The notes: generated by a model from the letters alone, not told the origin. Shown: positions 6,235 to 55,095, counted from the stretch's first letter. The stretch: DNA of 64,000 nt from Oopsacas minuta (GCA_024704765.1 JAKMXF010000022.1:186001-250000); one strand, 5' to 3'. Program-made: numbers and translations.

Positions 6235-6350
6235 TTCCAACTCAGTAATTTGCCAAATAATTGATTGTTCCTGGGTTTTAAATTTACGCATGTATATGTA
6301 CAAGTCTTTTTGCAAAATAATATTGTAAAGCGAGAATACTTTCTTAGAAA

Positions 6351-6373
6351 ATACACGTATACACGTATACACG
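6351..6373. repeat. Short tandem repeat (ATACACGT) x ~3
   Basis: ATACACGT ATACACGT ATACACG read directly. Confidence 0.7.
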
Positions 6374-6983: not shown

Positions 6984-14590
<7,607 letters not shown>

Positions 14591-15318
14591 TTCGTATCGA
14601 ATATAAATTATTAGTAAAATCAACTAAAATTGCTGTAACAGAGCTAGCTGTAATAAGTTGCTGAGATAAATAGAATTGAGTGGCAGTAGTAATGAGCAGT
14701 TCAAATGTATGTATATCAAGCTACTGTGTATTTATACTAAATTGATACATTGAAGATTAGGTTGTCATTATATTACCACAAGTGTGACCAATATAAGTAT
14801 CCTGAATTAGTAATAAGGAGGGATAATACATACATCTAAACACGATAATGTAAGGAATATAATCTCGTGGTGTATTACCTTTAGAGAAAAGTTAAGTTGA
14901 ATTTTAACTAGGAAATCTTCTATGTAGTTCACGCTACGGACGGAGCTCGGATCTTTAGCCCACGCTTGATTCCCCCCACAAATCAACGAGAGTATTACCT
15001 ATCTGGCGAGTAAATTGTATATTTTTCATTAAAAATATGCCTAAATAAATGCATGTTCATCGTAATTAATGAGTAAAGCTTGAACTCGTTTCAATGATTT
15101 CTGACATAGTAAAGAGAAGTATAAAAAAATTTGAAGAGCTATAATTAGAGAATTCTACATCTTTTGGAAAATAGCAGGGAGTACAGTAAATATTAGTTTA
15201 AATATTTACGAAATACATACATCATTTCCATTATCAAATATTTTTGAAGATAAAATCAAAATTGATAAAAATAATTAAACCAGCTGAAATATTCATCTAT
15301 ATACAACAGTTAAAAGCT

Positions 15319-17570: not shown

Positions 17571-19086
17571 GTATCACTTAGGCTATTATAAATAATAAAA
17601 TAGGATCAATGTTCTCGTCACTCCAGGACATATACTCGTGTCTCGGAAATTAGTCATATGTTCGGGCAAATTTGAAGCCAAAAAAGTCAGTTTAACTAAT
17701 AAAATCCCTGAACGCGCAGGTCTCATGGCTAGTTGATCTTATACACTAATAAAACTTTGGGGTAGAGGCACCCACACATACACTCAGAGACACATAAAAA
17801 TTATATAGCTGTGATTAGGGGCGCCGAACTCTCCAACTACTTCAACAACCCAGCTTATGCATTATTGAGGGGGGCTCAAGTCGCCTATGACTGTAACACA
17901 AGATTGTGCAATAATATTTTAAGCATCCACTCAATTTGTATTGAAGTACGTATAAATTGTATTTTGTCAAGCTAATGCACTTTCCGAATCTACAATCACA
18001 AAAATGTCTACAGCCCCTACGATCCTTCTGTCAGTCACTGTTTGTGAAGGCGAGCGTTAGTTTCAAATATAACAGAAATCAACGTCGTACGACTGCCACT
18101 GTCATCCGCAAACCAAAGATGTCCTACCCTTCTTACTTGTGCCCAAATGATAAATCCGAGGAATAGTATGAATCCTCAAGTTTTGAGCGATTTCAAAACA
18201 CACTACCATTATATAGAGGGAGAGGCGGAGAGGGCTTCCACTAATTTGAGAAAATCTGGATTGACATCAAATGGCGTTCATAAAATCAGTATTAACAATA
18301 TATGGTCAGATAGGTTTGCCATTATTAATTTATGTCATGGTCTTTGGTAGCCAGGAAATTATTAATTAATATAGCCACGGTCGTAACCCAACACCAAGTA
18401 CAAAAGATCAAAAGATGTCAAAACTTATTTCGATTGAGTGTGATGGAAGTTGAACCTCTGGCCCCCTCAAAATTTCACGCGATCCCGGGTGCATGGATAC
18501 GCAATGACAAATATGCTTTAGAAGCAGTTGGCAATATGGGTATATGGCATGATTCTGTTTGAGGATTACAAGTGTATACACTTTCACTTATCAGCCCCTT
18601 TCAATTATTTCTAAAAATGAATACGTAATACATAAACTCGTACTACGAAGTGCAAACTAGGAAATGGGACCTCGATTCCTCTAAGATCCCTTGGTGTGTT
18701 GTGTGAACTGGGACTACTAACTTTAATATTCCCAATCATAAAACGCAAACTTGTAATATTTGCGTTAAAACACTACATCATTGCAAAAGGAATAATCAAA
18801 GCAACACAAGTAATGCAGTAATATGCTGAGCATCATCATTGTTTTGAAGAAACCATGAGAAAACCACAACCCTCCTATATCAAGCTTGTTCTCATACTAG
18901 TGAATATCTCAACATATTTGTAAATAAACAAGATGCTTCTATAAATACCTCTACTTAGTAAAATAACTACCTTTTGCTTTCATAAATATATGTTCTAACT
19001 TTTCGTCTTCACACATTATTGATATTTGAACAATTAAGATGTTTGTATTTGGAGGAAGAAGCTCACACCTCCACATCAAACTCCTC

Positions 19087-22000
19087 ATGTATGTGACTAT
19101 GTTTTTGATTATTTTATTTTGCTCTCCTCTCGTCCAATCTCAAACGTGCAATGACATAACACTCGAGTTCACTGGTGTTGGAGCTGGTGGATACTCACAC
19201 AGTACTACCTTTCCAGAAGATGGTGATCCTGTCAAAATCGTGCCAGATAATGTAATTTTTACATCTACCACTAACATACTCAGTATTCAGATCGTTTTAG
19301 GTTTGTTTACTATTATCTCACGTCGTTACGCTCATGGATAATTATTTTATTTCATATTTGATGTGTTTGTATTTTTAGGAATATTTCGCTTCTCGGGTAC
19401 AGTCCCAGACAGTGAAAAAATTTTTATTCCTACCAATGATAGTTTCACACAGTTTGTAATAAATTATGGTGAAATACCCAATACTCTCTATATCAGGGCT
19501 GTAGATACCCAAGGGCTACCTGCCGGGGAATATATTGCACCATTACAAGAGATTGAATTCATATTGTATGGGGAACCACAGCCCCAAGAGAACAGATTTA
19601 CTATCTTTGCCATATTCGCTGCTTCAACAATTCCTTGCTTCATAGACTCAAGTGAGTATATTTGCGATTATTTACTTCAATAATTATTTATAGTTTATAT
19701 TGTTTGCTCCCTCTAGCTTCCGCGGGTACTCTCATATTCTTAGATCTAATCAATGATCCGCCAGAGCTAAACTTGTTCGGAGACTTTACTGAAACTAGAC
19801 AAGAATTTGTTTTTACTATTGGAAGAGATACTTCCATTCCATTCTATATTCCTCCAGTGGAGCTATTTGATCATGATTCTGAATTTATTTGTAATCTTAC
19901 AGTAAGTTTATTAGTAATTTCCCTACAAATCATTGATTACTGTGACTATTCCCACTAGGTACTCCTAACTAATCGTACAAGTATGAATGAAGTACTTGTG
20001 ACGTCATCTTCCCTCCCCTTTACTAATGCAACTCTATCATCTTCCTCCTATCAACTGGTTCTAGACTTCTCTCCCTCTGGCATGTCTTTCTCTGTACTGG
20101 AAGATGCTATTGAATCCCTCACCTATGAAAATACGGACAATCCCTCTGTTATTGGAGAACGTTATATTTATACTTCTGTTTCTGATTGTAAGTTTACTCA
20201 ATACTATTCAGGAATACATTTCAATTTATTGGAGCCATTTGGAAGGGAAGGAGACGGAAATATCTGGATCCCTGGGGCCGTTATATGTTGAAATATTTGT
20301 AACAATAACTTAAGTGTAATTATTTTATCGATTTATCCTCTAGGCTTTGCATATAGCGCTCTATACATCTCTACTATACTGGTTGTATTCCCGAATGACA
20401 ACACTCCATTGTTTGATTCTCCTAGCTATACCTTCTCAATACTAGAGAATTCAGCTGCTCAGACTCCAGTAGGGAGTGTAATAGCTACTGACGGAGACGA
20501 TCCCACTAGTCCACAGGGACAAATAGAATACAGTCTTATAGGATTTGAAACTCAGTTTTCTATAAATACAGAAACTGGTGAGTAATTATCTTTGTTTACT
20601 CATTTTCACCTGTCAGATTGTTATAATTGTTATAATTTAATTTTTGTGTTCTATTTTCTAGGTTTGATCAGAAGTAATCTTGTCCTAGACAGAGAAGCTA
20701 AACCCGATTACTTATTAACAGTAGTTGTTACAGATAAACCTCCTTTCCTTCCTAAATCTTCTACAGTTAGTTATATACTACTGCTGATACAATTTTAACA
20801 TTAATAACACGTAATTATGTGTAGGTTAGCGTTACTGTGCTTGTGGGTGATGAAAACGATAACCATCCTCAGATAATCCTCTCTACTCTCTTGATAGTAG
20901 TACCTGAGGATACTGTTGTATCAGGAGGGGGTGTGGTTATTGGTACCATCCGTGCGACGGATAATGACGATCCTAACACGGTTAATTCTCAGATTGTCTT
21001 CAGTTCACTTGACAATACAGATCCTTTCGTTATCAATATCGATGGCTCTGTCACTCTCACCTCTCCGCTAGACTTTGAGAATCAAACTAATTATGAATTT
21101 ACTGTTACTGCTACAGATGGAGGTAAACATATATTATATAACATTATTTATGGGCACCCTAATCGCTATTATTTCTTAATTAGGAGTTAACCAAAGATCA
21201 GTCACAGACATGCTCACTATTCAGGTGTTGAATACAAACGATGAATGTCCTGTATTCATACATGATGACGGTATAGGAGGTAGCATTAGATACACGCAGG
21301 AAGGCTCTGTGATAATAGCAGGGGATGATATAACTCTTAGTGATCCTGATGATGACGTCATCGCTGGTGTTACAATACAAATGTTATCTGATGATGATCC
21401 TGTAAGTATTTTGAATAAATATTCTTCTTCTAGGCATGGATAATATTTGATTAAATCTTGTTTCTTAGCCAAGGAGTTATCCCGTGGATGCTGCTTACTG
21501 TCGCTATGGTTCCACAACAGACCCTGAATTCTGTCTACCGTCTAGTTCCAATAAAATAGAGCTACTTACTCTACCTACACTACTGAGATCATATACTGGA
21601 TCCAATCCTGGTAGCAGCTCTTTTGCCAGTGACAGGTCAGTAATCTCTAATCAACACATCAATACTACAGTATGGTATTCCTCAGTATGGTATTCCTCAG
21701 TATGGTATTCCTCAGTATGGTATTCCTAAGTTCCTTAAACACAAGTACTTCTTAATTTATTAATCAAATTTTTCAATGAAGCGATTTATTTATTTCGAAT
21801 AGATAACGTATGAACATTTTAGACATTTTATTCCTTGAATTACTCAGAGATAGAATCTCTGAATTGACTAAAAATATTTCAAATTGGTAAGCAAATTCTT
21901 TTCTTATACAAATGTTTTACCGTTTAAATAGTCTGATCCTCCCGCCATGTAAACAAGTATCACTATATCACTTTATGTTCTATAGAGAATATCAGACAAT

Positions 22001-25000
22001 CTCTTCCGATCACTACCTCGAGTTGACTGACATAACAACTCTCTCTCCTCCAGAGAACCCACTCACTGATAACTTCACCTTCACAACTTGGATATACATA
22101 GAGGATACCACAACTGACTATGAGTATCTATTCAGTATTAATAGCGGCCTTAATCGTTATCTGGCATTCACTATAGCTAAGTCAAATCGGTTTGAGGTAT
22201 ACTATCGAGGCACAAACACACTGGTATCAGTCAGTAGACAGATTGTTAGAGTCAACTTTAACCTGGATCCCCCCTTCTTAAAAGACACCTGGCATTTCAT
22301 TTCAGTAACCATGTTGTATCCTAACATAGACGTTAGTATAAACTGCAAACAGATCTCTCCTTTTAGAGTTGTATACTTTGATACTAGCAACAACAAGATG
22401 ATTGATAACGACAATCTTGTTATGCCATTTCCTTTTGCTAATTTTTCAAATTCAGCTGTGGTAAGTATTACACACACAAATAACTTGATGTTATTGTGTT
22501 GTTATTTTGATTTATGTATACGTATAGACTGCATATATATTCACAAGACAGAGCAAGTCTCAGTACACCACACAGGGGAGAGAAATCCTTCCTACATTCC
22601 ATCGTCGCATTTTAACTTTTGAGGAAGTGTGTTGCCTCGCATCTTGTGGTCACTTATTCGATGCTACTGTCCCTGGTGGGGTTACTAAATCCTTTGACGG
22701 AGTTACTCGTACTCTCACGCTTTCAGGGGAAGCATCATTATCTGAATACCATGATATCGTAAAGAGTTTAACTTACAGCAATTTGAATCTGGATCCTGAT
22801 TCTGATGAAACAGTTCGATTCCAGGTTTGAATATTTCCAATTTATTGTCTGATAAAGATATATCTGTTCATTTATATTTCATTTTGATTGTAGGCTTACG
22901 ATTCGGTATGTCTTGGCCCCTCATTAGATGTTCCTCTCGTGATTGATGTGTCTAATTTCAACCCACCAATCCTCTTCCTGAATGGATCAGAACAGCAGAA
23001 CATATCAATAGAGTTCAGAGAGACTCCTGTACTTCCTCGTGAAGCAATACCAATAACAACACCAGATAGTATCATAACAGATTTAGATACAATAGCACCT
23101 CGTATCAATAATATTACAGTATCATTGATTGGAGCAGTAGACCTGACTGAACAGATTATATTTTCTGACGTGCTCTCTCATCCCAGTACTATAGTAGCCA
23201 ATAGAGACAGTCTTACTGAGATCACGCTAGTAGCCCTGGCAACTCCTACTGTTGCACATTTTCTTGCTATTCTAAATGACATACGTTATTCTAACGACGA
23301 ACAAGAACCATTCCCCGCACAGAGAATAGTTGAGTTCAGAACTTCAGATGATCGCTTCACAAGTCTTTCTATCACTACTATCGATGTGATTGAAGTTAAT
23401 GATATACCAGTTCTATTCCTCAGCTCTGCTATGGTGACAGATACTGTTCTTGCTAGTTACACACAAGGAGCTCTGCCTGTACTGTTCATATTCGGAGCTA
23501 GCATTGTTGATATAGATAGTAATATTGTTAATGCTGTGATTACAATACAAACATTTGACAGTGGAGAGGAGATCATTTCTGTGAGCCAGAGAGAAGCTGA
23601 TGATAATGGCATTACCTTCAGTACAACTACAAATGTAGGGGGAACAGGTGAGTTATACGGTAGAAACAAGAGACATTCATAAATCTGAATACTATTGAAA
23701 TCATAGGCGAAATACTAAATTTTAATTAAAGAAAACCCAAAAATAAGATTGCTTGTATACAGAAAACACAAATATAATATTTAATTGGAAAGTTAAACTC
23801 TCCCCGAGTCAATGGGTGTGCATGTGATTGAAATTTTGTATTATCTGTATAGTAGTTACACAGATTAACGAGAATCTACCTTATATGTAGTATATGTATC
23901 ATTTTACAATAATTATATACATCTATATTACAGGTACATTCAGTGTATTGACTCTAGAAGGCAATACTACTCCTGATTCATTTGCTCGGGTGTTACAGAC
24001 AGTTTCTTACATACACACGGGGCGTGGAACTGGATCCTCAGATGATCCCCGGGATGTTGAGATTTACGTAACAGACTCGAGAGGAGGTGTTAGTAAAGCC
24101 AGACTAGCTTCCATAACGCTATTTGTCAAAACTCTAATCAAATATTTCCTTAACTATCCTACTGACACGAATTTATTTAACACAACATTCTGTGAAGATG
24201 GTCCTGATGTTCCTATCGTGGGTAACGTGTTATTCTCCATTTCTGAGTCTATACCAACTAATATCATTGAGCTCAGAGTTCGTATTAACGAGCCAATTAT
24301 TGATGATGATGATCTATTGATTGATAGGGTACCAGCTGATAAAATTATCATTGCTAATAGTCAGCTATCATTAGAGATCAATACAGCTCAGAAGTTTATC
24401 ATAGTCTCTGGTATCGCATCACAAATTCCTTATCAGAATCTCTCACGTATGTTGAAATGAATAGTTAGTTTAATATACACTAAACTCCCATTATCTCGAA
24501 GCTTAAGGGATCGCGACAATCAATTCGATATAACCGATGACATTTATGTACTCTGATTTTGGCACTTTCGTTTGGGACTTTATTTGTTAATTTCAGACTT
24601 CAATATAAATGGGTATTTCGATATATCCTTGCTCGTTATAACGGAAGATTTGATTAATTACGCTATCTATGTACTTGTATTACAGAGTTGATGTCTTACC
24701 ACAATCCTGAGAACCCAATAGGAGAGCCAGAAGTCTTGGAGCGTCTGATTGAATGGTCCGTGAGTGATACAGATCCTGACACTATATACTTTGGTATAAC
24801 CCGAGTATCAATCTTGCTTAAGAACGATAACCCGCCAACTATTACTAACATAGAGACCAGCATCCCAGTCCTTGAGAACATTACAGTACCTTCTTTGATA
24901 TACGTGCTCACAGGATCTGATCTGGATACAGGGATAGATGGAGAATTCTATTTTCTGTTACAAAAAATAGACTCTGTGAATAAGTTCAATCTACAGAGTA

Positions 25001-28000
25001 CTGGAGAATTGTATGTGTTAGAGAGTCTAGATTATGAAACACAGACTACTCACTCTATCATAGTTACCATTATGGATAATGGTATGTTAGTATATGTGTG
25101 ATTATGATTAATACGATTATTAAATATTCTAATTAGGAACAACACAATGTGATGGTCCTGGGCCTCTACAGACAAATTACTCCATTACAATAGCAGTTCA
25201 GGATATTAACGATAATCCTCCTATCTTCAACTCTCCTTTATTCGCAGAATTTGAGGAGAGCAGAACTGGATATGTTGTCACTCCCAATGTAACAGATGCT
25301 GATTCAGGAGTTAATGCTATATTCACTCTAACTATCGCGTCAGGTAACACAGTGGTGTTCACTATAGTCAATGGACTGGATATACACGTGCTTATGGAGC
25401 TAGACTATGAAACACAAACTAATTACACACTACAACTAGAAGCAGTGGACCAGGGATATCCCTCTCTTACTTCTCTCACTAACTATATTATACAAGTTAT
25501 AAATGTTAACGATGTACCTCCTGTATTTATCCAGCCTCCTCTTTCCGCTACATTAGTCGTAAGTGTATCAGAGAATACACTACAGCAGGACATATTTATA
25601 CTGGAGGCTTTTGATGGAGATGCTCCCCCCTTCAATGAGATACGATTCTACTTTGCTCTTAACGTCCCTCAATTAGTTCTACAACACTTCTCTATTGACC
25701 CTATTACTGGAGGATGTGATGTAGTAGTAGCAGTAGACCGTGAGAGTACCCCTCAGTTTAAATTTGATGTACAGGCGTTTGATGGAACCTTTAACACTAC
25801 TGCTACCGTACAGATTGATATAGCTGATGTTAATGACAATCCTTCTGTTTTCCAACCTCCTTTCCAACTGTCTGTTCCAGAGAATGCCAGTAATGATACC
25901 TTAGTTGGTACTCTTCGCTTTACGGATGATGACATACCTCCTAACGATGCTGCCACCTTAATTATAATGAATACTCTCCTTCCCTTCAAATTGGAGATGA
26001 TTGATGGTCAGTCTGCTCGTCTGCTCGTGGCTGGAGAACTTGATTATGAAACGGTACCGAATTACACAGTTGTCATAATCGCAATAGACATAAACGGAAA
26101 CATGTAAGTTATAATACAGTTGATAATTACTACAATATTATTTCTTACTGCTTGTGTGTAGAGTCAATCAGAGTTATTTTGTACATATCTTAAACGTTGA
26201 TGACAGTGCTCCTATCATTCTATTAGACGTATCTTCTCGTACTATTTCTGAGAGTACTGTACAACCTATGACGTCAGATGTTTTCTCAGAAGCTACTGTG
26301 TTTGATCCTGACTTATTGCCTGTACGCTACTTGACGGTAGGAGTAGCAGATGAGAATGATGAGTTATTTTCACTTCCTCGCTGTACTCCAGATGGAATAG
26401 CTGATTCTTGTGGAGATGCTTTAACCAATCCTTTAACTGCAGAGTGTATCACTAATTGCGGATACTATCTCAATCTAGATGCTGCTAGCTTTCCGCAACT
26501 ACAGATATCTCTTGATGGGCCATTAGGAATATTGGAAATCATCTCTCTATCATGTAAGCATATATATACGATATATTCAATAAATATTGACTATCCAATT
26601 AAATAATATTCTCTCCTCGTGTAGCTATATCTGTGGAAGAGATGAGCAGTGTACTTCAAGCAATAGAGTACTTGGACTTACGAGATGAGCCAGGAGACTT
26701 AAACATTAGAATAATTGCACAAGCTGGTGACAACTTCCAATTCGGGCCATTCTCTGCTTTCGATATCACCATACAGCCTGTTAATGATCAAGCCCCAGTG
26801 CTAGATTTGAGTGCAAGTGAGAATACAACTTATAATATCCTAGGAAGAATTGATTACTATGAGGAATCTGGTGCTCAGACCTTCTCGACTGATCCTTCCA
26901 TATTTGATGCTGATCTACACACAGAATTTGAGGTATTTGAATAATACCTTAATTGTATCAATAGCAATTTATTTATGACTATTGTCTGCAGGTCGTTTCT
27001 ATTATTGGATTTCTAACTGGTGAAAACGTCCTATCTCCCTCTATTAGCTATAATGTATCATTCAATAGGACAGAAGCATTAGACTTCTTACGTGATTATC
27101 CATTCGAAGATTCCAGAAATGAACCAGGGATGTGTTGGAATGCTACAGATACTCAGTTGGATATTTCTGTTGTCATAAATGACAATACATTTGACAGCAA
27201 TCCTGCTATAATATATGTATTGATCATTTGTATAAACGATGCTCCTATCTTAGACCTAGATATACTCAATCCTGGGATTGATAGTGTATTTGTCTTCGTA
27301 GAAGATTTTCTATATTCTCCCGTATTCAATGCTTCAGTTATATCATTCACTGATTCAGATTCCACTCTCTTCCATAATGCGACTGTGTCTCTCACGAATC
27401 GTAAGGATGGGCCAGAATATCTATCCTTCTACCACTCAGGTGTAGGACTAGACTATACCATATATGGTAATAATTCTGAAGTAATATCGTTCTATAGTCA
27501 GCAAGGGATTACAGCACAAACAGTAAATCACTGGATATATAGCATAACTAATAAACTGATTTATTTCTCCTTCATTCTAGGTATTGCAGTTCTTCTCTTG
27601 GGTGTATTATGTGAATTCTGAGATTAACTTAACCTGTTCAGCTCGAACTATTGAGACAGCTGTATTTGATGGAGAGGACCTCAGTCTAACAGCTGTAACT
27701 CGTGTAGTATTCCAATGTCAGAATGATTTTCCTGAATTATATTTGGATGTTGCTAATATGCAGAAAAACATCAATGTATCCTTTACAGAAGGCTCAAACA
27801 CACCCGTACAGCTGTTCTCTACTATATTCTTGAGAGATATAGATTCAGCTTTTCTGATGTATGCTCAGATTACTGTGCTTGATAAAGTACAAACAAATGA
27901 AGGTATTTGTGGAAATATTTCTAAATATCATATAGTCTTAATGCATTACTATAGGTATTACGATTGATTTGGTAACAACTCAAAAAAGTGTTAACAAGAG

Positions 28001-46000: not shown

Positions 46001-49000
46001 GAGGATCTCAATACCCCTTGCCTGGCGGGTAAGTCATTTCCTGCATTATAATAATATTATCAAATATTTTATCTTTATCGATTACATATACTAACAGTGG
46101 AACACGCATATAACAAATACAGTTATAACGAATTCGAGCTTATAGCGAATAAACTGTGACCGACGAATGGGTTCGTTATAAGCGTGTTCTCATTTCCGTT
46201 AATCTACCCAATCAGCTGAGTTACGCATTAGTTCATACTGTTAGTATTTAGACTATTATGGTATATAACAAACTACACGTATCCTATTTCTCTTTAGATA
46301 TTGTGATCATTCTCTACACACAAGTTTTGACACAATTAATGCACATACAATATGTGGAGACGCTTCAAATATAATAGACACCTCAGCTGTTGATATAACT
46401 GGTAGTGTGAACGAGGTTACTACACCTCTTCCTCTCTTCTCACTTCCTGGTCAAACAGACTCTTATATGTCTTACTATCTTGTTCACTCAAGTAACTCTC
46501 TTAGCAATTTTTCATTTTTCGTTTGGTTCTCTCTATCTAGCATTGATGGCCCGATTTCCTTGGTTAGACAAGAAGGGCAGTTTGAAATTGTAATCACTCC
46601 TGATCCCACAAATTCAAGATACATTATTACAATTTCAAACTCTGTATCATCTATCAACTTTACTCTTTCTGGCTATGAAATAGTCGGTAATGGTTGGCAT
46701 CATTTTGTTATTTTTATGGATGGAGCACAAGTCGGTGTTGATATCGATAATCTTTCATCTTTCTCAAATTTCCAAGTTACCCTTAACACATCTTTACCGT
46801 TGACGTTCGGAATTAACTTGAACGGCCAGATAAATACACCTTTGTTCTCAAATGATAATCACATCTCTGACGCAATTAGCTTTGTTAGATGTATTCGTAC
46901 ATGTGGCGAGTTTATTTCATATGAGGGACCCACTGACCAAATTTCAGTTGTTCGTGCCTTCCGAAAACGTTCCATATTCCTCCGAGTTCTCGCCCCATTT
47001 CATTACCCAGCTATTAACACATATAATATTTTAATGGAAGCTTTAACGAATGTTTATTACGAGAACGTACTTGATGAGCCTAGCTCCAACCCTCGTGTAG
47101 TCGCCTACCAAGTTTCGGATTCATCAGGTTATGGACCGACTACTCAGACAGAACTTTATCCTTTGTTGCTCAATGATAAAGAGCCGATTATTGACCTCAA
47201 CAGTGATGATGATAGTAATGCAGCCTTTGTAACTACATTTGTTGAAAATTCTGGTGGCGTATCCTTGATTCATTTTAGTGCGATTGTGTTGGACCAAGAT
47301 AGCGGGGTTTTCTCTCTAACTTCCATTATTACAACTATCACAAATCCAATTGATTTAAACAATGAGAGACTATTTGCTTTGAATTTACCTCCATTTTACA
47401 CTGCTCAACAGCAAGACTATACCTTAACCATTACATCTACAGTAGATAAAACATTTGACGAGTGGACTGAAGACATTTTGAGAGGAAATGTCATCCACTA
47501 TATCGACGACTTTATTGAGCCTACCAATGGAACACGAGTGATAAGCTTGACTGTGGTGGAAATTATTAATGGGTTTAATTTTACTGATACTGCCTTCATT
47601 TATGTATCTATCCTGGCTGTAAATGACGAGCCTGTGATCGATCTTAACAATCAAGATCCTCTTACAATTGATAGATTTGTTATGTATTTTGAAGGAGATC
47701 TCAATATTAACCTTCTATCTGTTGATGCTCTCTCAATAACAGACTCTGATAACCTCAATCTTCTTTCTGCCGAAATTTGGCTAAGTCCCACGCCAGACGG
47801 TATTCTAGAGTCTATAGACATCATGGATGATCCATCTAGCGGTCTCTCTATTGAAAACAACGGATCAATTACGATAACAGGCAATGCTAGCACTTCTGCC
47901 TACGAGGATATTCTACTTTCCTTGGAGTACGCTAATTTTAACGAGGAAGATCCTGATGATTCCCCTCGTATGGTTCTTATAAGAGTCTATGACACTGATC
48001 AACAACCAAGTGATACTGCTATCGTTTACATAGACTTCTCTGCTATTAACGATGCTCCTATTCTTGATTTGGATGCTACAGATCCTGCTAATGGCTATTA
48101 CACTGTGTTTATTGAGGAGACCGGTTGTGTGTCTATTGTTAATCCATCAGCCTCAATTGTAGATGTTGATAGCGATACGCTAGTTAATTTGACCGTCAAC
48201 TTCAGAGAGGGGAACACCGATATTCTCGAAACTCTCTATGCAAATGATACTGATGGATTATTGGTAGAGAGTGATAATACTGGTGGGATAACACTCTCAG
48301 GGGATAGAGATGTAGCCGATTATATAAGAGTACTACGTTCTCTTCAATATTGTAATGCAGGAGATGAACCGAGGAGTGACGTCATAAGAAATGTTACCAT
48401 ATCTGTATTTGACAAAGAAGGTAGAATTAGTAATATAGCTCTTTCTGAAGTTATGGTAGAGAGAGTTAATGATAATCCTGATCTTACGCTAGGAGGTAGG
48501 ACTAATGCAAGCTATGGCTCATCTTCTGAATTTGTATTCGCAGACCCTATAAACGTCACTGATGTTGACAGTGAACTCTTTTTCCGTGCTCTTGTTTATA
48601 TATTCTATCCTTATGATGGGAAGGACTTTGAAATCATAACATTTGAAGGAGATCTAGGCAACCAAATCACATCTGTGGGTCCAAGTGAGGTTCTGTCAGG
48701 ACAGTTCGAAGGTGCTATATTTTATAATGTTACATTCTTGATACAAGCCAGTGGTCAGCTGGTAGAAGAAGTTATTGCTCGTATACAGTACAGTAACACT
48801 GCTAATAATCCAACTACAAACGAAACTAGGGAGATTTGTGTTAGCGTGTTTGATGTGGATGGTGGAGCTAGTGATTTAACTTGTATAGTTATCTCTGTTA
48901 CCGAACCTAACTTATTCCCACCTCAGTTTCTAAATGAACTACGAACCTTGACCCTGAGCGAAAACACAGCTGTTTCTACCATAATAGACACAGCAAGTGC

Positions 49001-52000
49001 TTCAGATAACGACCAAGATGTCGATCTTACTTACTCAATAGTGTCAGTTGCCTCCGTCCCGGATACTGATACCACTGGGTTATTTTCAATTGACACTTCT
49101 GGTAACATAATTCTACTTCAGAGTTTAGACGCTGAATCTGTTCTAAACTACGAGTTAGAACTTCAAGTCAGCGATAGTGGAATTCCGTCACTGACCGCAC
49201 AAGCTCACAGAACTTTTATACTTTCTGATATTAATGACGTAACTCCCGTCTTCCAGCCTCCTCTGGATTGTAGCATTGGGTGTACATTCTGTGTTAACGA
49301 AGGAGACTCGTTCAGTAGTGTATTGACTGCTACTGATACTGATAAGACAAGTCCTAATAACGTCATTGCTGGTTATGAGGTTAATTCCAATCAGTTCAGT
49401 ATAAACTCTGTTGGGTTACTAACTAACATTAACCCTATTGACTACGAAATATCTCCAATGATATCTCTGATAGTAGGAGCATTCGATGGAGGGATTGATC
49501 CAGGACTGCTAACTGGCGAGATCAGCATTACTATCTGCGTAATTGATCTAGATGATGAAGCTCCTATTTCAACACAACGTACTCATGGTGTTTATATTAA
49601 AGGTTCTGATCCCGTATTTGTTGACCAGTTCTTGGATGTAGTAGATGTTGATAGCAGTGGTTTGGATCAAGTTTCCGTCTCTATCATAATTCCATCCAAT
49701 CCTTCATCTATCCAAGAGGACTGTACTGACACTTGTTTTGACAGGAGATTAGAACTATGTCAAACTTCTCTGGTTGCGATCGATCTATTAGTTCTTGTTG
49801 AAATTGTAAATAATCAATCCGGTGTTTTCTTAGAACCAGACCCGTTTTCAGGCCCCTGTCCTTATATTAGAATCATAGGTAGGGATAGTGAGGGCAAAAG
49901 AGATCACTCTCTAATGGGTCATGGGGTAATATTTGCTAGCCAGCTTCCTACACTTGTTGCTCAGCCAGTGACAATAATCGCAGAAATGTACAACTTTGTA
50001 GGTGAAGGATATCTCTTGTCAATTAATAATGGAGTGAGTCGTCACCTTTCAGTTTGGTTGCGGAAAAGTAGGATTTCAGTTTTTTATACAGACAATGTGA
50101 ATCTATTCGAATGGAAATTGAACACCATTACCCCTGATCTTGTTACTTATACTTTCTTCTCCCTGGTCATTACAATTGATCCAAGTCTTGGAACATCCTC
50201 AAGTGCGGTCCATGTGTACCGAGATGGTAGTGAACTCCCAGGCGGTCTCGCCACATCAAGCTCTTTCAGTGCATTAGAGAATCAAGATATGTCGATTGGG
50301 CAGAGATTCCCAAGTGATAGAACTAGTAATAGAATAACGTCGGGTATTCGTAACTTATTCATTATTCCCTCTCTTCTTCCAGAAACATCTAGAAATTGTT
50401 TCCTACCCTGTCATGAGTTTGTAGATATCCGTACTGAACTGCTCCCAAGCACTGTAGACTTGTCACATACTGTTAACGCTATTGCTTTATCTAACCGAGG
50501 TACATTCAATGACTTCCTTACTGCACTCAGGGCTCTTCAGTTTGTAAGTTTCTTTAACGATCCTGTAACAACAGGTGCTGTATTAGGTTCCGTATCTGAC
50601 ATACGATCTTTAAGGATATTTATAGATGATCCATCTGGTAATAGAAATACAGGAGTCTTACAGGCGTATGTAGCTAACACACTGCTACCGCTAACAATTG
50701 ATCTTGACGACAGTATTTCTGGAAATAATGCTTTCGCTACTTTTACCGAGGATGCGTCAGCTGTTGCTATTTTCCAAGATTTAGGACTCCTGTTTAAAGA
50801 AGGAGAGTTTGCCAGACCGCCTGTACTACAGCTAAAAATTGCAATACTCAACCCATCGGATGGAACAGATGAGTATTTATCTGCTCAGAACTACTCCAAT
50901 ATAATAGCACATGTTGATATTCATGAAATAGTGTTTGTAGGACCAGGTGCTCCTATACACTTTAAGAATGCATTACAAACAGTGACATACTTCAATGAGA
51001 AAGACCTTCCTGACACTACAACGAGAAATATCCAAGTTATGTTCACAAGTGTAGACAATCGTGTAAGTGCTCCCTCTACACTTTTCCTATCTCTTTCTGA
51101 GTCCAATGATTGTCCAAACATATATCTCAACAATGCTCTTGACTCTTCTATAGACCTAGATTTCATCGAAGGTTCTTTCCCTCTGTCTCTCTTCCCTAAT
51201 CTTAATATACAAGATACTGATGGAGAATACATACTACAAGCCTCACTAGAGATAGTTTATTCTACCTACATACAAGGAGAAGATTTTATAACATTTGATA
51301 CAACCCTTGCTCCTCTGGTTAATGCAGTACTATCAGCTGATCAGCGCGTGCTTATAGCAACCCTCAACACTACTATCTTAAATTACCAAACATTCTTCAG
51401 ATCTGTTAGTTTCCAGAGTACTTCTAATCCTCTTCTTAACTCTAATGGAGAAGTAGTTACCAATACTGATAAGAGTTTAATTCTGCTACTAACAGACAGC
51501 TCAGGATCTAATCTGAACTGTCCTAATGGACTAGTTAACCTGTCATTTATACCAATTGATGCCTCACCCACAATTCTACTCCCAAATATCTTAGTTAACT
51601 TTACAGAAGAGAGCAATGCTACAGTACCAATCCTATGGGACCTTACTCTGTCTGATTCAGATTCACTAGCTCTAGGTGAGTAATTGCAATGTACGAATAA
51701 GCTTAATAAGTCAAACAATATCATTTCTGAAACCGAATTCATATCCAGCCCAATTGTGCTAGACTACAATTAGCTGAGTCGTCTATGTTTTGTAAATACT
51801 AAATGTAATTCTTTCATTATTATCATTTTTACATTATTACGTATATGCTCATACTTCTAGGTGATAACAGATTGGTAGTACGTCTGAATAATATAGGAGA
51901 TCCTGGTAATGAGAATTTAGCCATTACAATTGATGGGATCACTGCTAGAGCAACATACTTTGAGTTTACCGGTGACATAATGCTATCAGATGCTCAGACC

Positions 52001-55000
52001 AGCTTAAGAACTGCCACTTATATAAATACTGCTGAAGAACCCAACATATTGAACAGGACTATTGAAGTTAGTTTATACTCAGGGAATGGGAGTTTGTTAC
52101 TTACTGAATACAGGGAAATCTGGATTAAGTATGTCAATGATCATGCTCCTGATGGGAGAAATGAGTACTTATTCACTATCTTAGAAGAATTAGAAATTGG
52201 TACAATAGCACAACAGATAATCCCACAAGATGACGACAAGGACATTAGTCCTAGCTTTACATTTAGCTTCATTGGAAGTGTTTCTATTCCTTTTACATTG
52301 AACTCATTAACAGGGGAGTTGACTGTGTCTTCTCGGATAAGTTTTGAAGTTATGGCTAGCTACCAGTTTGATGTGAGTTAATTATAAAAACATTTCTTGT
52401 GTTTATTAGTTAAAATATCTTTTGTATTTAGGTTATGATTAATGATGGTGGTATAAACGGAGAGAATGAACTAACAGCTGTAGTAAAAGTAGTCATAACG
52501 TTAGAGAACATTCAGGAGAAACCTGAAATAGATCTGAGTCCATCTGATGATACATCAATTGACCAGACAAGTCCTACTTTCTTTATCGTTAATCAAATTA
52601 GTGTTGTGCTATTCCGTGAGAGTGTTACTATAACTGATGAAGATTTCGGGGATACAATTGAGCAAGTTAGAATTAAGTTCCTGAACAGACCTAATGGAGT
52701 ACAAGAAGGACTTCGTGTTGGAGTATCATCGTTGTTATCCACTAGTAATGTGTTCACGATATCTCTATCTGGTATTGTGGATATTTCTGGAGAATTAGCT
52801 AAGATTCAATATTTCAACTCATTGGATTCTCCAGACACACAGACCAGATCTCTTGAAATATCTGCAGTTGATTCTACAGGACAAGTTAGTCAGAATGCAA
52901 ATCTTCAGATTGAACTTCTCACTATTCCAACATTTGGTCTTGAAGAATATAACTTGTATGTTTACGAGAATTCTCTCTTGCCAGATGCTATTCAAATAGA
53001 GGCAGTAGTTGGAGACGGTACCTTTACAGCGTTCCAGTATGCCCTGTCAGGACCAGGATCTGATCGCTTGGAGATATCAGGCGATGGTTGGATATCTGTA
53101 GTTATGGAGCTGGATAGAGAGGGAGAGTACGGACAAACCTTAACGATATCTGTATTGGTAGGTATTAATGAATTTTCACCTCTTATAAATTGCATTATTA
53201 CTTATTTACTATAGGCCACAGATCCTCGTAGTCAGCCCAGGACAGGCAATACAACTATTATTGTAATAATATTAGATACTAACGACAATCCTCCAACTAT
53301 TTCAGGGATAAATGGAACATTTAATCTTTATAGAGATGTAGAGTTAAAGCCCTTCCCAACCAGTAAGTTTGTACAAGTAAAGTTGGAAATATTTCTAAAA
53401 TAACATGTTATATTCCTGTAGCTACTAGCATTACAGATTTGGATACCTCTAATTTAACCAGGATATCAGTTCGTGTGATCGGCATTTACCCTTTACAACA
53501 GAACCCATTCACCTATCTTACTTGTGAAGATGATTTGATAGCAGTCACAAAACATCGGTTTGTTTACTCTGTTACTATTTGCAGTTTATTCCACTTCTAT
53601 TTATACTCTCTCTTCCAGTTCCTGCGGACTCTCTACTATTCCAGATGATCTCACGATTACTGCAATTATATCAAGTGACTCAAACTCAACCAATTTGGCT
53701 GGCAATGAAGTATTACAGATCCGAGAGACTTCTCATGTTTATCTTAATCGTACTTCTGTATTGAACGGTCCTTACACCCACATGACCATTGACTTCTGGC
53801 TCCGCTGGCTTGGCAGTGAAAGTGGTTATATTTTCGCTCTCACAGATAGCCCTGGTTATAAAAGGTGATACATTTGTATTCTCAGTTAATTACAGAAACT
53901 ATTTACAATGTATATACTATTTAGGTATCTTGCTGTCTACTACGATGTAGAAAGGGAACAACTAAGTGTATACTTCAGTGAAGACGGTATTGAACCGGAT
54001 GAAGCTAGAATCAGAGTGCTATGTCCTGTTGTTATTACAGATCAGCGCTGGCATCATATCGCTATTGTAGTAGCATTCCCTAATGTGCGTATTTATGTAG
54101 ATGGAAATGAACTCACGTGTATTATCTATCTGGGGCCAGCTGGAGATATCGAGCATACGTTAGAGAATTCTATAGCAGGTGAGCTACTAATTATTTGTTA
54201 GTTATTCTGGCTAGTTACCAACTCCTCTATTCTGACGTGAAGAGAGGAGATGACACTGAGCCTATACTATCCACTCTAGCAAGCTGCTGTTCTTGTAAAT
54301 AGCATGTCGTTCACCCGTGGGAATATTCATATTATAGATGTTTAATATCATATTATTTCTCAGGTCACCCTATTTCTGGTCCGGAATCTGATGATACTCA
54401 GGTTGCATTCACATTGGGAGCAAGACTACAAAACACTCACTGGACACAGAGAGGAGAGTTTGACATTTCAACCTTCACTGCTGTCCACTACGCTCTCAAT
54501 GCTGATTTCCTGAGTTGTCTATTGAATTGCATGGAGACCTTCGACCTTGGACTAGACTCCACTGGATTAACACAGGTGTGATATAATTAACACCCATGAT
54601 AGAATCATAATTGTGTATTATCCATGGTACAAGTATGTTAGTATAGGTAATTGTTACGCTTCAAAACTGCTTTAAGTTGAAATTTTCAATGTAAATTCAA
54701 AATGATACAGATTTACAGATCAGAAAACCTAAACACACATTGATTAACCATTTAAATTTTAGAGTTTCAACCCGACATCAAGAGAGTACGTGATAGAAGG
54801 AGATTTATCACCAGTTTACGCTACAGAGATAGTTCAAGCAATTTTATATAATAACAAAGCTGATGAACCAAATGTACAATCTCTACGTCTTACAGTATAT
54901 GACGGTGTAGACATCACAAATGGAGACTTACTTGTGTATGTAGGGGTTCTTACTCGAAGAAGACGTGAACTTGATCATATCTTAGAGCCAATTGAGATTA

Positions 55001-55095
55001 ACTATGATTCGTTTGGAAGTGGTGCTGACCCTCTCATGCCACTACACTTAATATTTCTACTCACTGCCTTCTTCATTTTGTTTCTATTATATTAG
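19087..55095 (+). CDS. Giant cadherin/calsyntenin-like extracellular mosaic protein, ~50 exons, roughly 9,000 aa (hand estimate)
   Basis: Signal peptide MYVTMFLIILFCSPLVQS; many DxNDNxPxF, DxD and LDRE/LDYE cadherin repeats; NDxPxLDL-type repeats; four LamG-like domains; hydrophobic C-terminus then TAG. GT-AG junctions traced by hand are phase-compatible except 1-nt breaks at ~28458 and ~29490. Confidence 0.85.
21237..22953 (+). other. Calsyntenin-type module 1 (LNS inserted in Ig-like repeat)
   Basis: EFCLPSSSNKIELL, NFTFTTWIY, TWHFISVTMLYPNIDVSIN, CLASCG, LTLSG...YHDIVKSLTYSN. Confidence 0.7.
21668..21727. repeat. 15-nt tandem repeat (CAGTATGGTATTCCT) x4, intronic
   Basis: Four perfect copies inside intron 21636-21985. 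Confidence 0.95.
24476..24655. mobile_element. Degenerate pogo/Tigger-like MITE remnant in an intron of the giant gene
   Basis: TACACTAAACTCCCATTATCTCGAA at the left, weakly complementary CTCGTTATAACGGAAGATTTGA at the right, internal TTCGATATA repeats. Confidence 0.3.
37088..40417 (-). CDS. GOLGA3: Golgin-160 (GOLGA3)-like coiled-coil protein, single exon, 1109 aa, nested antisense in intron 36982-40771
   Basis: Ser-rich head then long coiled coil. QQWLQSQL...RIKLQQELA...HSLKERAQI and LQTCLISLKEDMGKLQSQM match recalled GOLGA3 segments. Confidence 0.72.
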   Translation of the reverse strand: MESVSEDRIPKIQINRESSEELFKTLLVSIYNESPPKRKNRNEEFYSQVCIPSPSLSSDNLRRSMSAVSTHSTNSDIVSALAHSNPIKQSRNYTPQSNIPLSASLNRLNCPIHLKPIRNSDTPDSNLIGYISNRSDDSHSPLSQSDIEISTPSRLTEFNDSTAPVKSTSMVWSEDDVYRKELNDRSRERDRLQNELKSKEERISSLRRQMEDCEERSSVDSEQLRQLKEKVRRLERDCEVGRKEKDGVEEGQQWLQSQLDQMMKERIKLQQELATSRGLVLSKGSELENTKADLTKASRECSHLRTHSLKERAQIVTTLERVEEEVLSKDSLLEELNSQLYQVSEERDNLINKMSELKQNFTEHETMKNELENQLRFQQEQLTETKHRLEESERKKQELKREISQMNMQVETNQNQLANIQKNHDGLHVQKTAAERLLMDKENMLGGLSQEKQLLEQQLQECRQQISYLNTQIGAIQGELAEKKRKITEMELEEEARVRAVQRAIQERDFAHVELQDVKQEFNDLLKEKESNEKKLQKELEAKEKKVKNVQYAMRDVGDKMKAMEDGLNEKSEREESMITELDTTKRENQQGKLRINQLQAELAHIQIELANSQEESRRAKEMRGEGVQFLQEERGKLMLQLNQAKMDYDRNLSTLKQEVRQGERDRESVMQQLIAEQQKTREKLYRSEEGLRRAQEQNVQLEQEVRDKSSRTGIEKARSFEKLEKRYEILQQQNDDLVRQFEERKKELDTVHSQLNNEHDQKNHLLREFDKVKRDYNKKGGELEQALSQRGYEFETMKGQLNATQQGYAQLSEHAQLLERALADKEGMLARLSAQAEMVLSQKQAEDNEMQEILTDLTSRAHQYEKERDAAYHEATLMKERVNRMQADLRASYNDQTSLLDRKDSQELKVANLEGKHRASEKNLKELESRYENSETEKTRLQAQVKQFDGQLSMRIEQANFLQDRLNMAQSQTAELEAHSQKLEEMLSSSEKRHQSEIQSLREMYSTLQETTQTKHDHVLQKVSTSLPSTGPSKNVAALQTCLISLKEDMGKLQSQMYQQVENVNTSFALSKKFENHFTKNIPGATPQPTYPQTSTPRLMKNQDYTDY
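45832..47170 (+). other. Calsyntenin-type module 2
   Basis: GGYCDH...AHTICGDA, FSFFVWF, GWHHFVIFMDG, VRCIRTCGEF, LTNVYYEN...PRVVAYQVSD. Confidence 0.7.
46095..46193. mobile_element. Small TIR element (Tigger-like MITE) in intron 46029-46297
   Basis: GAACACGCATATAACAAA (46100-46117) and TTCGTTATAAGCGTGTTC (46172-46189) are 16/18 complementary; CAGT start; internal TTATAACGAA/TTATAGCGAA subrepeats. Confidence 0.55.
49551..50677 (+). other. Calsyntenin-type module 3
   Basis: EDCTDT...LELCQTSLVAIDLL, RHLSVWLRK, VHVYRDG, MSIGQR, NCFLPCHEF, FLTALRALQF. Confidence 0.65.
53281..54950 (+). other. Calsyntenin-type module 4
   Basis: TCEDD...KHRSCG, MTIDFWLR, RWHHIAIVVAFPNVRIYVDG, FTLGAR, SCLLNCMETFDL, IVQAILYNN. 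Confidence 0.75.

What the first reader, a model, noticed from the sequence alone, without database searches (positions are those of the whole stretch)
19087..55095. A ~9,000-aa cadherin / Ig-like / LNS mosaic surface protein of unfamiliar architecture
Seen: the dozens of + strand ORF fragments splice into one frame from a signal peptide to TAG at 55095, about 28 kb coding by my exon sum. Hand count gives ~35 cadherin repeats (blocks of 2, 4, 9, ~17, 2, 1, 1), ~28 longer NDxPxLDL-type repeats and 4 LamG domains. Known: Fat, Dachsous, Celsr and classical cadherins pair LamG with EGF repeats and have a cytoplasmic tail; none of that is present here. Inference: a giant adhesion or matrix protein outside the standard cadherin classes, possibly an undescribed family.
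Basis: partly seen in the sequence, partly recalled or inferred. Interest (0 to 1): 0.9.

Follow-up and report, generated by a model that had tools for sequence, protein, structure and literature searches.

The report
Giant sponge cadherin with calsyntenin-like modules
This is one real, expressed 51-exon gene for a 9,246-residue surface or matrix protein, built from about 36 cadherin beads, about 28-30 beads of a second bacterial-type "cadherin-like" kind and four LamG domains. It belongs to a conserved but unnamed family whose building plan repeats the outer part of the synaptic protein calsyntenin.

Summary
My gene model gives 51 exons from ATG 19039 (or 19087) to TAG 55095, a 27,741-nt CDS and 9,246 aa.

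- **One gene:** RNA-seq contigs confirm four predicted junctions, including the 3,790-nt intron that splits a single cadherin repeat.
- **Conservation:** an orthologue in a related assembly is collinear over 9,052 aa (58.5% identity, 41 of 50 introns identical).
- **Content:** 35 canonical cadherin repeats in blocks of 2, 4, 9, 16-17, 2, 1, 1; at least 26 and probably 28-30 copies of a 147-aa repeat; and four LamG domains. There is no EGF, no internal membrane-spanning segment and no cytoplasmic tail. A conserved RRRR site precedes a GPI-type hydrophobic end.
- **The 147-aa repeat:** it folds confidently (pLDDT 95.7) as a beta-sandwich. It is nearest to bacterial Cadherin_4/Cadherin_3-type domains and, among animal proteins, to the region of calsyntenin after its LNS (LamG-type) domain.
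- **LamG placement:** each LamG sits about 60 residues into one such repeat. The unit Cad-Cad-[repeat with LamG]-repeats therefore mirrors the calsyntenin ectodomain.
- **Family:** the same C-terminal domain order recurs in giant ORFs of other animal assemblies at about 30% identity. This is an uncharacterised conserved family, not a one-off.

Function is inferred: a calcium-stiffened filament of about 0.3 µm for adhesion or matrix. Interest is moderate. Another reader of this scan had already noted the tail on this same window.

The parts
19039..55095 (+). Whole gene: 51 exons, 50 GT-AG introns (median 64.5 nt, maximum 3,790), CDS 27,741 nt, 9,246 aa
   Evidence: Gene model. RNA joints. Collinear orthologue.
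19039..19140 (+). Signal peptide: basic n-region, hydrophobic core, then ..PLVQS|QTC. An alternative start ATG lies at 19087.
   Evidence: Hydropathy scan. The orthologue has an equivalent N-terminus.
20424..21230 (+). Cadherin pair (block 1)
   Evidence: In-house HMM, E 7e-21 and 7e-20. Pfam Cadherin on these exons.
21231..22974 (+). LamG#1 nested in a 147-aa repeat: first half, then LamG, then second half
   Evidence: Pfam Laminin_G_3 at 29.3 bits against a cutoff of 27.6. 67% identity to the orthologue through the exon 21986-22460. Half-repeat hits on either side.
22966..24846 (+). Three 147-aa repeats
24853..26198 (+). Cadherin block 2 (4 repeats)
26211..28190 (+). 147-aa repeats: 3 strong and 1 weak
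28200..31674 (+). Cadherin block 3 (9 repeats)
31660..36517 (+). Region rich in 147-aa repeats (7 copies), plus 334 aa still unassigned at 32047-33205
   Evidence: One copy passes the Pfam Cadherin_4 threshold (27.6 bits against 25.1).
36524..45825 (+). Cadherin block 4: 16 detected repeats and one 109-aa divergent gap. It is interrupted by the long intron.
36982..40771 (+). 3,790-nt intron that splits one cadherin repeat (...LAGPDSDR | FSIDINTGDL...)
   Evidence: In-frame junction. GT..AG joint in an RNA-seq contig of run X4. The same arrangement is present in the orthologue.
37088..40417 (-). Nested, intronless, antisense gene for a 1,109-aa coiled-coil protein. It is not part of the cadherin protein.
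   Evidence: ORF. RNA word depth about 25-40 times that of the host exons. Orthologues at 59-74% identity, nested in the same intron in the orthologous locus.
45826..47195 (+). LamG#2 module: half repeat, LamG, then repeat
   Evidence: Pfam Laminin_G_3 at 28.1 bits. Half-repeat hits.
47184..48929 (+). Four 147-aa repeats. The stretch 47631-48488 was folded.
   Evidence: AlphaFold2 pLDDT 95.7. Fold searches.
48942..49538 (+). Cadherin pair
49539..50687 (+). LamG#3 module: half repeat, LamG-like core, half repeat
   Evidence: No Pfam hit. hhalign to LamG#1 gives E 4.8e-5. Language-model look-alikes are calsyntenin and Laminin_G_3 clusters. Half-repeat hits. The AlphaFold2 model was poor.
50688..52156 (+). 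Three 147-aa repeats
52163..53274 (+). Cadherin, 147-aa repeat, cadherin
53275..54954 (+). LamG#4 module: half repeat, LamG, half repeat
   Evidence: Laminin_G_3 at 23.9 bits, E 5e-5. Homologous C-terminal LamG in 16 other giant proteins. Half-repeat hits.
54955..54966 (+). RRRR, the only polybasic (furin-type) motif in the protein
   Evidence: Conserved as MRRRRS in the orthologue.
55024..55092 (+). C-terminal hydrophobic tail preceded by small residues (..GSGA DPLMPLH + 15 hydrophobic residues). This is a GPI-attachment-type signal and no cytoplasmic residues follow it.
   Evidence: The orthologue ends the same way.

Best explanation
**What is shown.** The region is one expressed gene of an animal with short introns; earlier notes of this scan call it a glass sponge. 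It encodes a 9,246-residue secreted protein. The protein is a linear chain of about 65 beta-sandwich beads. About 36 are classical cadherin repeats. About 28-30 are copies of a 147-residue cadherin-like repeat that carries its own conserved acidic set (E, DxD, D, NDxP) at the repeat boundaries. Four LamG domains are each inserted about 60 residues into one of the 147-residue repeats.

**Inferred mechanism.** Calcium bound at the inter-repeat linkers stiffens the chain into a rod of roughly 0.3 µm. The C-terminal signal is exchanged for a GPI anchor, so the rod stands on the outer leaflet with no link to the cytoskeleton. A conserved RRRR site about 45 residues from the end allows a furin-type convertase to release it into the matrix. 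Binding is done by the membrane-distal cadherin repeats and by the four LamG heads, which project sideways from the rod. On this reading the protein is a long-range adhesion tether or pericellular-matrix scaffold.

**Building plan.** The unit Cad-Cad-[repeat containing LamG]-repeats is the plan of the calsyntenin ectodomain, used here several times over.
For: **One gene**
- The model has no internal stop.
- RNA-seq contigs give exactly the predicted joints 35768/35833, 36190/36258, 36360/36431 and 36981/40772.
- The long intron cuts through a single cadherin repeat.
- The orthologue is collinear from aa 2 to 9203, with 58.5% identity and 41 of 50 introns identical.

**Domains**
- Cadherin and Laminin_G_3 are confirmed by Pfam.
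- The 147-aa repeat has 23-26 copies. In a 61-sequence alignment E21, D38, D40, D121, N140 and P143 are nearly invariant.
- The fold is confident, pLDDT 95.7.
- The best solved matches are cadherin and protocadherin EC pairs, E about 1e-8.
- The best Swiss-Prot models are calsyntenin-1/2/3 residues about 530-830, E 7.5e-14 to 3e-10. These alignments start at query residue 59-60.
- ESM Atlas structures of bacterial Cadherin_4/Cadherin_3 clusters match at TM 0.72-0.82.
- One copy passes the Pfam Cadherin_4 threshold.

**Nesting**
- First-half hits (HMM positions 2-62) lie before each LamG and second-half hits (63-146) lie after it, in both species.

**Ends**
- The signal peptide, the single RRRR and the hydrophobic C-terminus are conserved in the orthologue.
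Against: - Function, calcium binding, GPI attachment and furin cleavage are all inferred from sequence; no dedicated predictor or experiment was available.
- Only 4 of the 50 junctions were checked against RNA. The joint over the long intron rests on a 30-nt flank in one contig.
- LamG#3 has no Pfam support and its AlphaFold2 model failed (pLDDT 43). The nesting has therefore not been seen in a structure.
- CLSTN_C matches are below threshold (12-18.8 bits against 27).
- TM-scores to calsyntenin are only 0.37-0.43.
- VIA-align Z-scores against solved structures are middling (at most 9.6).
- 334 aa (32047-33205) remain unassigned.
Confidence: 0.6

Rival explanations
1. Two or more independent genes: an N-terminal gene ending near 36981 and a C-terminal gene starting near 40772, separated by the coiled-coil gene on the other strand.
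For: A 3.8-kb gap holds a highly expressed antisense gene. All other introns are 52-350 nt.
Against: - The two flanks are the two halves of one cadherin repeat and are in frame.
- An RNA contig joins 36981 to 40772 at GT..AG, and word depth is equal on both sides (399 and 398.5).
- There is no stop or signal peptide at the supposed boundary.
- The orthologue has the same arrangement.
Confidence: 0.03
2. A divergent member of the Fat / Fat-like / Dachsous planar-polarity cadherins that merely lost its EGF repeats and tail. RefSeq labels a sponge relative 'protocadherin Fat 3-like'.
For: - Long cadherin runs and weak Cadherin_FAT4_N hits.
- LamG domains are present.
- The Corticium relative P0015 is named Fat 3-like and does have a transmembrane helix and tail.
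Against: - There is no EGF, no transmembrane helix and no cytoplasmic domain.
- Nearly half of the beads are 147-aa repeats that Fat4-type and the other cadherin-only giants lack: 0 copies in the Nematostella and Monosiga giants and other cadherin-only proteins.
- The LamG domains are nested inside repeats and spread along the chain, not grouped near the membrane.
- Named Fat4 hits cover only 7-17% of a family query.
Confidence: 0.08
3. A purely secreted matrix protein. The C-terminal hydrophobic stretch is removed, or the RRRR site is cut in the secretory pathway, and the mature protein is never membrane-bound. It would act like a FRAS/FREM- or CSPG-type matrix organiser.
For: - The RRRR just upstream of the tail is conserved.
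- Fold and language-model neighbours include FREM1/3 and Cadherin_3 (CSPG) clusters.
Against: - A GPI-type signal conserved in two species at 58% identity suggests that membrane attachment matters, at least transiently.
- No Cadherin_3 or Calx-beta Pfam hit was found.
Confidence: 0.25
4. A recent bacterial acquisition or contaminant, because the 147-aa repeat is mostly a bacterial domain type.
For: - The closest language-model and structure clusters are bacterial.
- Giant proteins made only of this repeat occur in Pseudomonas and in the cyanobacterium Oculatella.
Against: - The gene has 50 spliceosomal introns, four of them confirmed in RNA.
- Base composition is the same as in the flanks.
- Animal neighbours and a nested gene are conserved in synteny.
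- Metazoan-type cadherin repeats are interleaved with the 147-aa repeats.
Confidence: 0.02

Closest known systems
Calsyntenins (CLSTN1-3, CASY-1)
   Same: Both have a pair of cadherin repeats followed by a LamG/LNS domain and then beta-sandwich domains. The folded 147-aa repeat pair matches calsyntenin residues about 530-830 best among all Swiss-Prot models (E 7.5e-14). Those alignments begin at repeat residue 59-60, which is where the LamG domains are inserted here. There are faint CLSTN_C Pfam hits, and calsyntenin clusters are the language-model look-alikes of the LamG#3 module.
   Different: - Calsyntenins are about 950-990 aa with one such unit, a transmembrane helix and an acidic kinesin-binding tail.
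- This protein is 9,246 aa with four LamG units, long cadherin and repeat runs, a GPI-type end and no tail.
- CLSTN_C is below threshold.
Fat / Fat-like, Dachsous and CELSR atypical cadherins
   Same: Giant size, long runs of cadherin repeats and presence of LamG.
   Different: Those proteins have EGF repeats next to LamG near the membrane, a transmembrane segment (7TM in CELSR) and signalling tails. None of these is present here, and they lack the 147-aa repeat.
CSPG4/NG2 and FRAS1/FREM matrix proteins (CSPG repeats, Pfam Cadherin_3)
   Same: Both combine LamG with arrays of cadherin-like repeats of 110-150 aa. FREM1/3 and Cadherin_3 clusters appear among the fold and feature neighbours.
   Different: No Cadherin_3 or Calx-beta Pfam hit. 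CSPG4 and FRAS1 are transmembrane proteins. They have no classical cadherin repeats.
Bacterial giant adhesins with Cadherin_4 / Big_9 / RapA2-type cadherin-like repeats
   Same: The 147-aa repeat is closest to these by structure (TM 0.72-0.82; E 1e-20 to 1e-14) and by language-model features (0.96-0.97). Arrays of 26-33 copies occur in Oculatella and Pseudomonas proteins.
   Different: This is a spliced animal gene in which the repeats alternate with metazoan cadherin repeats and nested LamG domains.
T-cadherin (CDH13)
   Same: A cadherin-superfamily protein held by a GPI anchor without a cytoplasmic domain (my own knowledge of CDH13).
   Different: T-cadherin has five classical EC repeats and a prodomain. 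It has nothing like this size or mosaic.

Membership tests
Cadherin superfamily | Tandem extracellular cadherin repeats scoring above the Pfam PF00028 threshold | tested here: met
   335.8 bits in 10 stretches on one exon, with further hits. 35 repeats by the in-house HMM.
Fat / Dachsous / CELSR atypical cadherins | EGF repeats adjoining LamG; a transmembrane segment; a cytoplasmic signalling tail | tested here: not met
   At most 4 Cys in any 40 aa. No EGF hit on the exons scanned. The only hydrophobic segments are the signal peptide and the extreme C-terminus.
Classical cadherins | Cytoplasmic catenin-binding domain | tested here: not met
   The protein ends in the hydrophobic tail, with no residues beyond it.
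Calsyntenin | Two cadherin repeats followed by an LNS/LamG domain | tested here: met
   Cad-Cad-LamG occurs three times (aa 344-836, 6335-6734, 7481-8062) and Cad-LamG once. It is met at the level of the module, not of the whole protein.
Calsyntenin | CLSTN_C (PF19699) above threshold | tested here: not met
   12.0 bits and 18.8 bits in the orthologue, against a cutoff of 27.
Calsyntenin | Fold of the post-LNS region | tested here: met
   Foldseek E 7.5e-14 to 3e-10, probability 1.0, query residues 59-286 against calsyntenin about 530-830; TM only 0.37-0.43. Calsyntenin C-terminal clusters also appear.
Calsyntenin | Single transmembrane helix and acidic tail with kinesin light-chain-binding motifs | tested here: not met
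   No cytoplasmic region exists.
CSPG4 / FRAS / FREM | CSPG repeats (Pfam Cadherin_3), with Calx-beta in FRAS/FREM | tested here: not met
   No Cadherin_3 or Calx-beta hit even at E up to 10. There is only structural-cluster resemblance.
Bacterial cadherin-like domain (Pfam Cadherin_4) | PF17803 above threshold | tested here: inconclusive
   One copy scores 27.6 bits against 25.1. Eight other copies scanned singly gave nothing. Structure and feature neighbours are Cadherin_4 clusters.
GPI-anchored proteins | N-terminal signal peptide plus a C-terminal signal made of small omega-site residues, a short spacer and a hydrophobic end | tested here: inconclusive
   The sequence pattern is present and conserved in the orthologue. 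No GPI predictor or experiment was available.

The most novel reading that the evidence does not exclude
This gene represents an ancient, pre-bilaterian 'poly-calsyntenin' family. On this reading the calsyntenin ectodomain (Cad-Cad-[cadherin-like repeat with a nested LNS]-repeat) is a single surviving unit of a giant repeating architecture that sponges still keep. Its second bead type would be the animal branch of the otherwise bacterial Cadherin_4 domain. A synaptic organiser of bilaterians would then descend from a GPI-anchored giant adhesion or matrix filament of nerveless animals.
Probability: 0.25. Interest if true: 0.75.

Novelty: new variant of a known kind. Interest (0 to 1): 0.55.

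Why it matters
- **Cadherin classification.** It adds a well-supported, transcript-backed and cross-species conserved member to the small set of non-bilaterian cadherin architectures. This one does not fit the Fat, Dachsous, Celsr, classical, hedgling, lefftyrin or coherin scheme.
- **An unmodelled domain.** About 28-30 beads per protein belong to a domain family that Pfam does not model in animals. It links bacterial giant adhesins, CSPG-type repeats and the uncharacterised C-terminal ectodomain of calsyntenin.
- **A testable origin.** The nested-LamG unit gives a concrete hypothesis for where the calsyntenin ectodomain came from.
- **Annotation.** Such genes are easily broken into dozens of fragments or mislabelled 'Fat-like'. 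The exon table here can serve as a template for the orthologues.

Tried and rejected
- **LamG#3 fold.** AlphaFold2 of the LamG#3 module with an 8-sequence orthologue alignment failed (pLDDT 42.7). It was therefore not used for fold search, and the nesting rests on HMM half-hits.
- **Sequence searches for the 147-aa repeat.** A PDB sequence search with the repeat profile gave only marginal protocadherin linker matches, and none for the LamG#3 module. My recollection that the repeat might be the T1SS-143 repeat was not borne out: NCBIfam gave nothing for the window's copies and only weak tandem-95 hits for distant relatives.
- **Relation to canonical cadherin.** hhalign of the 147-aa repeat against the canonical cadherin profile was not significant (E 0.019 over 24 columns). 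The two are kept as separate sequence families with a similar fold.
- **Origin of the 6,200-6,500-aa ORFs.** I first suspected they were bacterial. Two loci that could be fetched have animal neighbours (laminin/netrin-type and soluble guanylate cyclase genes), so at least those are giant animal exons.
- **Model corrections.** The first gene model contained spurious mini-exons over the antisense gene and four spurious in-ORF introns. One merged 'exon' was really an intron. These were corrected with orthologue evidence.
- **Species and literature.** No named close homologue was returned, so the species was not identified by my own tests. Literature searches found no description of this family. 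The key 2012 cadherin-diversity paper is not held.


Full report
**Setting.** The window has 36% G+C throughout. Its + strand between 19 and 55 kb is a dense series of open pieces separated by very short GT-AG introns. This marks a compact animal genome. Earlier notes of this scan call it a glass sponge, one naming Oopsacas minuta. I did not verify this. The sequencing runs that hold the locus combine long-read contigs, Nextera-type and TruSeq-type libraries and RNA-seq from one sample. That agrees with how the O. minuta genome was produced (PMC5968619).

**Gene model.** I trained codon scores on the two largest exons and chained exons with a dynamic program using iteratively learned splice-site matrices.
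- After removing spurious mini-exons over the antisense gene, the path 36981 to 40772 is in frame.
- Orthologue evidence showed that 22190-22366 and 33551-33655 are coding.
- 50002-50091 lies inside an orthologue alignment with 80% mean column identity and almost no gaps, so I kept it as coding. I also kept 43785-43823 as coding, because the orthologue aligns in a single HSP through it.
- 32143-32238 is a true intron: the orthologue carries a stop there and the stretch is not conserved.
- The final model has 51 exons and 50 introns (median 64.5 nt), a 27,741-nt CDS and 9,246 aa, from ATG 19039 to TAG 55093-55095.

**Transcript evidence.** I had one read-laying run and spent it on 35600-41500.
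- Run X4 behaves as RNA-seq. Its contigs skip 35769-35832, 36191-36257, 36361-36430 and 36982-40771, all with GT..AG ends and at exactly my coordinates.
- A 6,979-nt spliced contig continues upstream.
- Word depth is 399 on one side of the long intron and 398.5 on the other.
- The long intron divides one cadherin repeat (...LAGPDSDR | FSIDINTGDL...).

The 'several genes' refutation therefore fails at the one place where it was plausible. The joint over the long intron has only a 30-nt flank, and 46 junctions remain untested against RNA.

**Conservation.**
- The best library hit to the 5.4-kb exon was a 1,798-aa ORF at 52% identity.
- Walking its contig gave a 44-kb orthologous locus. tblastn shows collinearity from aa 2 to aa 9203.
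- An independent model of that locus has 50 exons. Global alignment gives 58.5% identity over 9,052 positions, and 41 of 50 introns share position and phase.
- The orthologue has the same nested antisense gene, the same RRRR and the same hydrophobic end.
- Seven assemblies hold the orthologous exon of about 1,800 aa at 57-73% identity.

**Domains.**
- An iterated HMM seeded on one Pfam-confirmed repeat finds 35 cadherin repeats in blocks of 2, 4, 9, 14(+1)+2, 2, 1, 1.
- A second HMM, seeded on the stretch between two NDxPxLDLD motifs, converges on a 147-aa repeat with 23 strong copies. A broader HMM adds three more.
- Pfam does not recognise this repeat, apart from faint CLSTN_C and one Cadherin_4 hit above threshold. 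NCBIfam is silent.
- In a 61-sequence alignment of repeat pairs from many proteins, E21, D38, D40, R113, D121, N140 and P143 are nearly invariant. This acidic set sits at the repeat boundaries, as the calcium ligands of cadherins do. That is the basis for inferring calcium-dependent stiffening.

**Fold of the 147-aa repeat.** The repeat pair 47631-48488 folds with pLDDT 95.7. Each repeat is a beta-sandwich with one short helix.
- Against solved structures, the best Foldseek matches are cadherin-23, protocadherin and Fat4 EC pairs, E about 1e-8. VIA-align Z-scores are only middling, at most 9.6, so no close solved relative exists.
- Against Swiss-Prot models, the top 16 hits are all calsyntenins, over their region after the LNS domain, E 7.5e-14 to 3e-10.
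- Against AlphaFold DB fold clusters, RapA2-type cadherin-like, DUF5801, DUF4347 and calsyntenin C-terminal clusters lead.
- Against ESM Atlas models, bacterial Cadherin_4/Cadherin_3 clusters reach TM 0.72-0.82. Language-model features agree at 0.96-0.97.
- A sequence-profile comparison with the canonical cadherin repeat is not significant.

The second bead is thus a distinct, mostly bacterial type of cadherin-like domain. Its animal relatives are the CSPG repeats and the calsyntenin C-terminal ectodomain.

**LamG domains and their placement.**
- LamG#1 and LamG#2 pass the Pfam Laminin_G_3 threshold.
- LamG#4 scores 23.9 bits and has homologues at the C-termini of 16 other giant proteins.
- LamG#3 has no Pfam hit but aligns to LamG#1 by hhalign over 130 columns (E 4.8e-5). 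Its nearest language-model clusters are Laminin_G_3/Cadherin and calsyntenin clusters.
- Each LamG is preceded by a match to HMM positions about 2-62 of the 147-aa repeat and followed by a match to positions about 63-146. This holds in both species.
- The calsyntenin alignments begin at repeat residue 59-60.

I infer that LamG is inserted at a fixed point inside a repeat, here and in calsyntenin. I have not seen this in a structure, because the AlphaFold2 attempt failed.

**Domain order.** With R for the 147-aa repeat, C for cadherin and [L] for a nested LamG, the protein reads:

R1-2, C2, [L]R4, C4, R about 4, C9, R about 8 (with 334 aa unassigned), C16-17, [L]R5, C2, [L]R3, C1, R1, C1, [L], tail.

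Three times this is Cad-Cad-[R with LamG]-R(n), which is the calsyntenin ectodomain plan.

**Ends of the protein.**
- The N-terminus is a typical signal peptide.
- The protein has a single polybasic site, RRRR at 54955-54966.
- It ends with small residues, a short spacer and 15 hydrophobic residues followed directly by the stop codon. The orthologue keeps all three features.
- This pattern is that of a GPI-attachment signal with an upstream convertase site, as another first-stage note on this window already proposed. It remains a sequence inference.
- Composition is strongly acidic (13.9% D+E against 4.1% K+R), with 141 N-glycosylation sequons.

**Wider family.**
- Of the 150 best library hits, many are 4,000-8,000-aa ORFs that mix both bead types.
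- Several show the same C-terminal order as here, C about 15-20, [L]R5, C2, [L]R3-4, C1, R1, C1, [L], at about 30% identity (P0029, P0047, P0207, P0057, P0004).
- About a hundred such clusters exist, nearly all unnamed.
- Two loci that I could fetch have animal neighbours and further giant cadherin exons upstream.
- The only named relative with both bead types is a Corticium candelabrum protein labelled 'protocadherin Fat 3-like'. It has a transmembrane helix and another domain order.
- The giant cadherins of Nematostella and Monosiga hit only through their cadherin repeats and have no 147-aa repeat.
- Arrays made only of the 147-aa repeat occur in Pseudomonas and Oculatella proteins.

**Interpretation.**
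- *Shown:* one spliced, expressed, conserved gene; its bead composition and order; the fold of the second bead; the absence of EGF, transmembrane helix and tail.
- *Inferred:* calcium stiffening, a length of roughly 0.3 µm (taking about 4.5 nm per bead, from knowledge of cadherin ectodomains), GPI anchorage, optional furin release, and binding through distal cadherins and laterally displayed LamG heads.

I commit to a long-range adhesion tether or pericellular-matrix scaffold at about 0.6. A purely secreted matrix role is the main variant.

**Comparison and novelty.** It is a member of the cadherin superfamily. It fails the defining features of the Fat/Dachsous/Celsr, classical, calsyntenin and CSPG/FREM families, as set out in the membership table. 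It works most like a multiplied calsyntenin ectodomain on a GPI anchor. I found no description in the searchable literature. I rate it a new variant of a known kind with moderate interest. Diverse cadherin mosaics in sponges and choanoflagellates are expected. The calsyntenin link, the nested LamG and the unmodelled bead family are the points worth following.

Noticed in passing
window 37088-40417 (-): An intronless 1,109-aa coiled-coil gene lies antisense inside the 3,790-nt intron of the cadherin gene. Pfam gives only weak Golgin_A5 and ANG-1 hits. Its RNA word depth is about 25-40 times that of the host exons. The nesting is conserved in the orthologous locus, and orthologues at 59-74% identity exist in five other assemblies. 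No named homologue was found.
   Followed up: partly
window 56284-57252 (-): The downstream neighbour is a single-exon 323-aa protein with five LIM domains (PINCH-like; Pfam LIM 180 bits). In the orthologous locus the equivalent ORF lies on the same strand as the cadherin gene (L001 18914-19885 +). This suggests a small local inversion between the two species.
   Followed up: partly
window 32143-32238 and orthologue (merged L003+L001) 14763-14837: This true intron is a multiple of three and open in frame in this genome. ORF-based or naive models read through it and create a false hydrophobic 'transmembrane-like' segment (VILVLYLVLVRF...).
   Followed up: yes
L005 1-22601 and L004 8001-26338: Other animal assemblies encode relatives of this protein in a few enormous exons (4,866, 3,445 and 2,880+ aa), whereas this genome splits it into 51 exons. 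Intron density in this gene family therefore differs greatly between lineages.
   Followed up: no
window 21636-21985, 23648-23933, 24447-24685, 46029-46297: Several introns are unusually long for this gene (239-350 nt against a median of 64). They might hide small exons or alternative exons. They were not checked against RNA.
   Followed up: no
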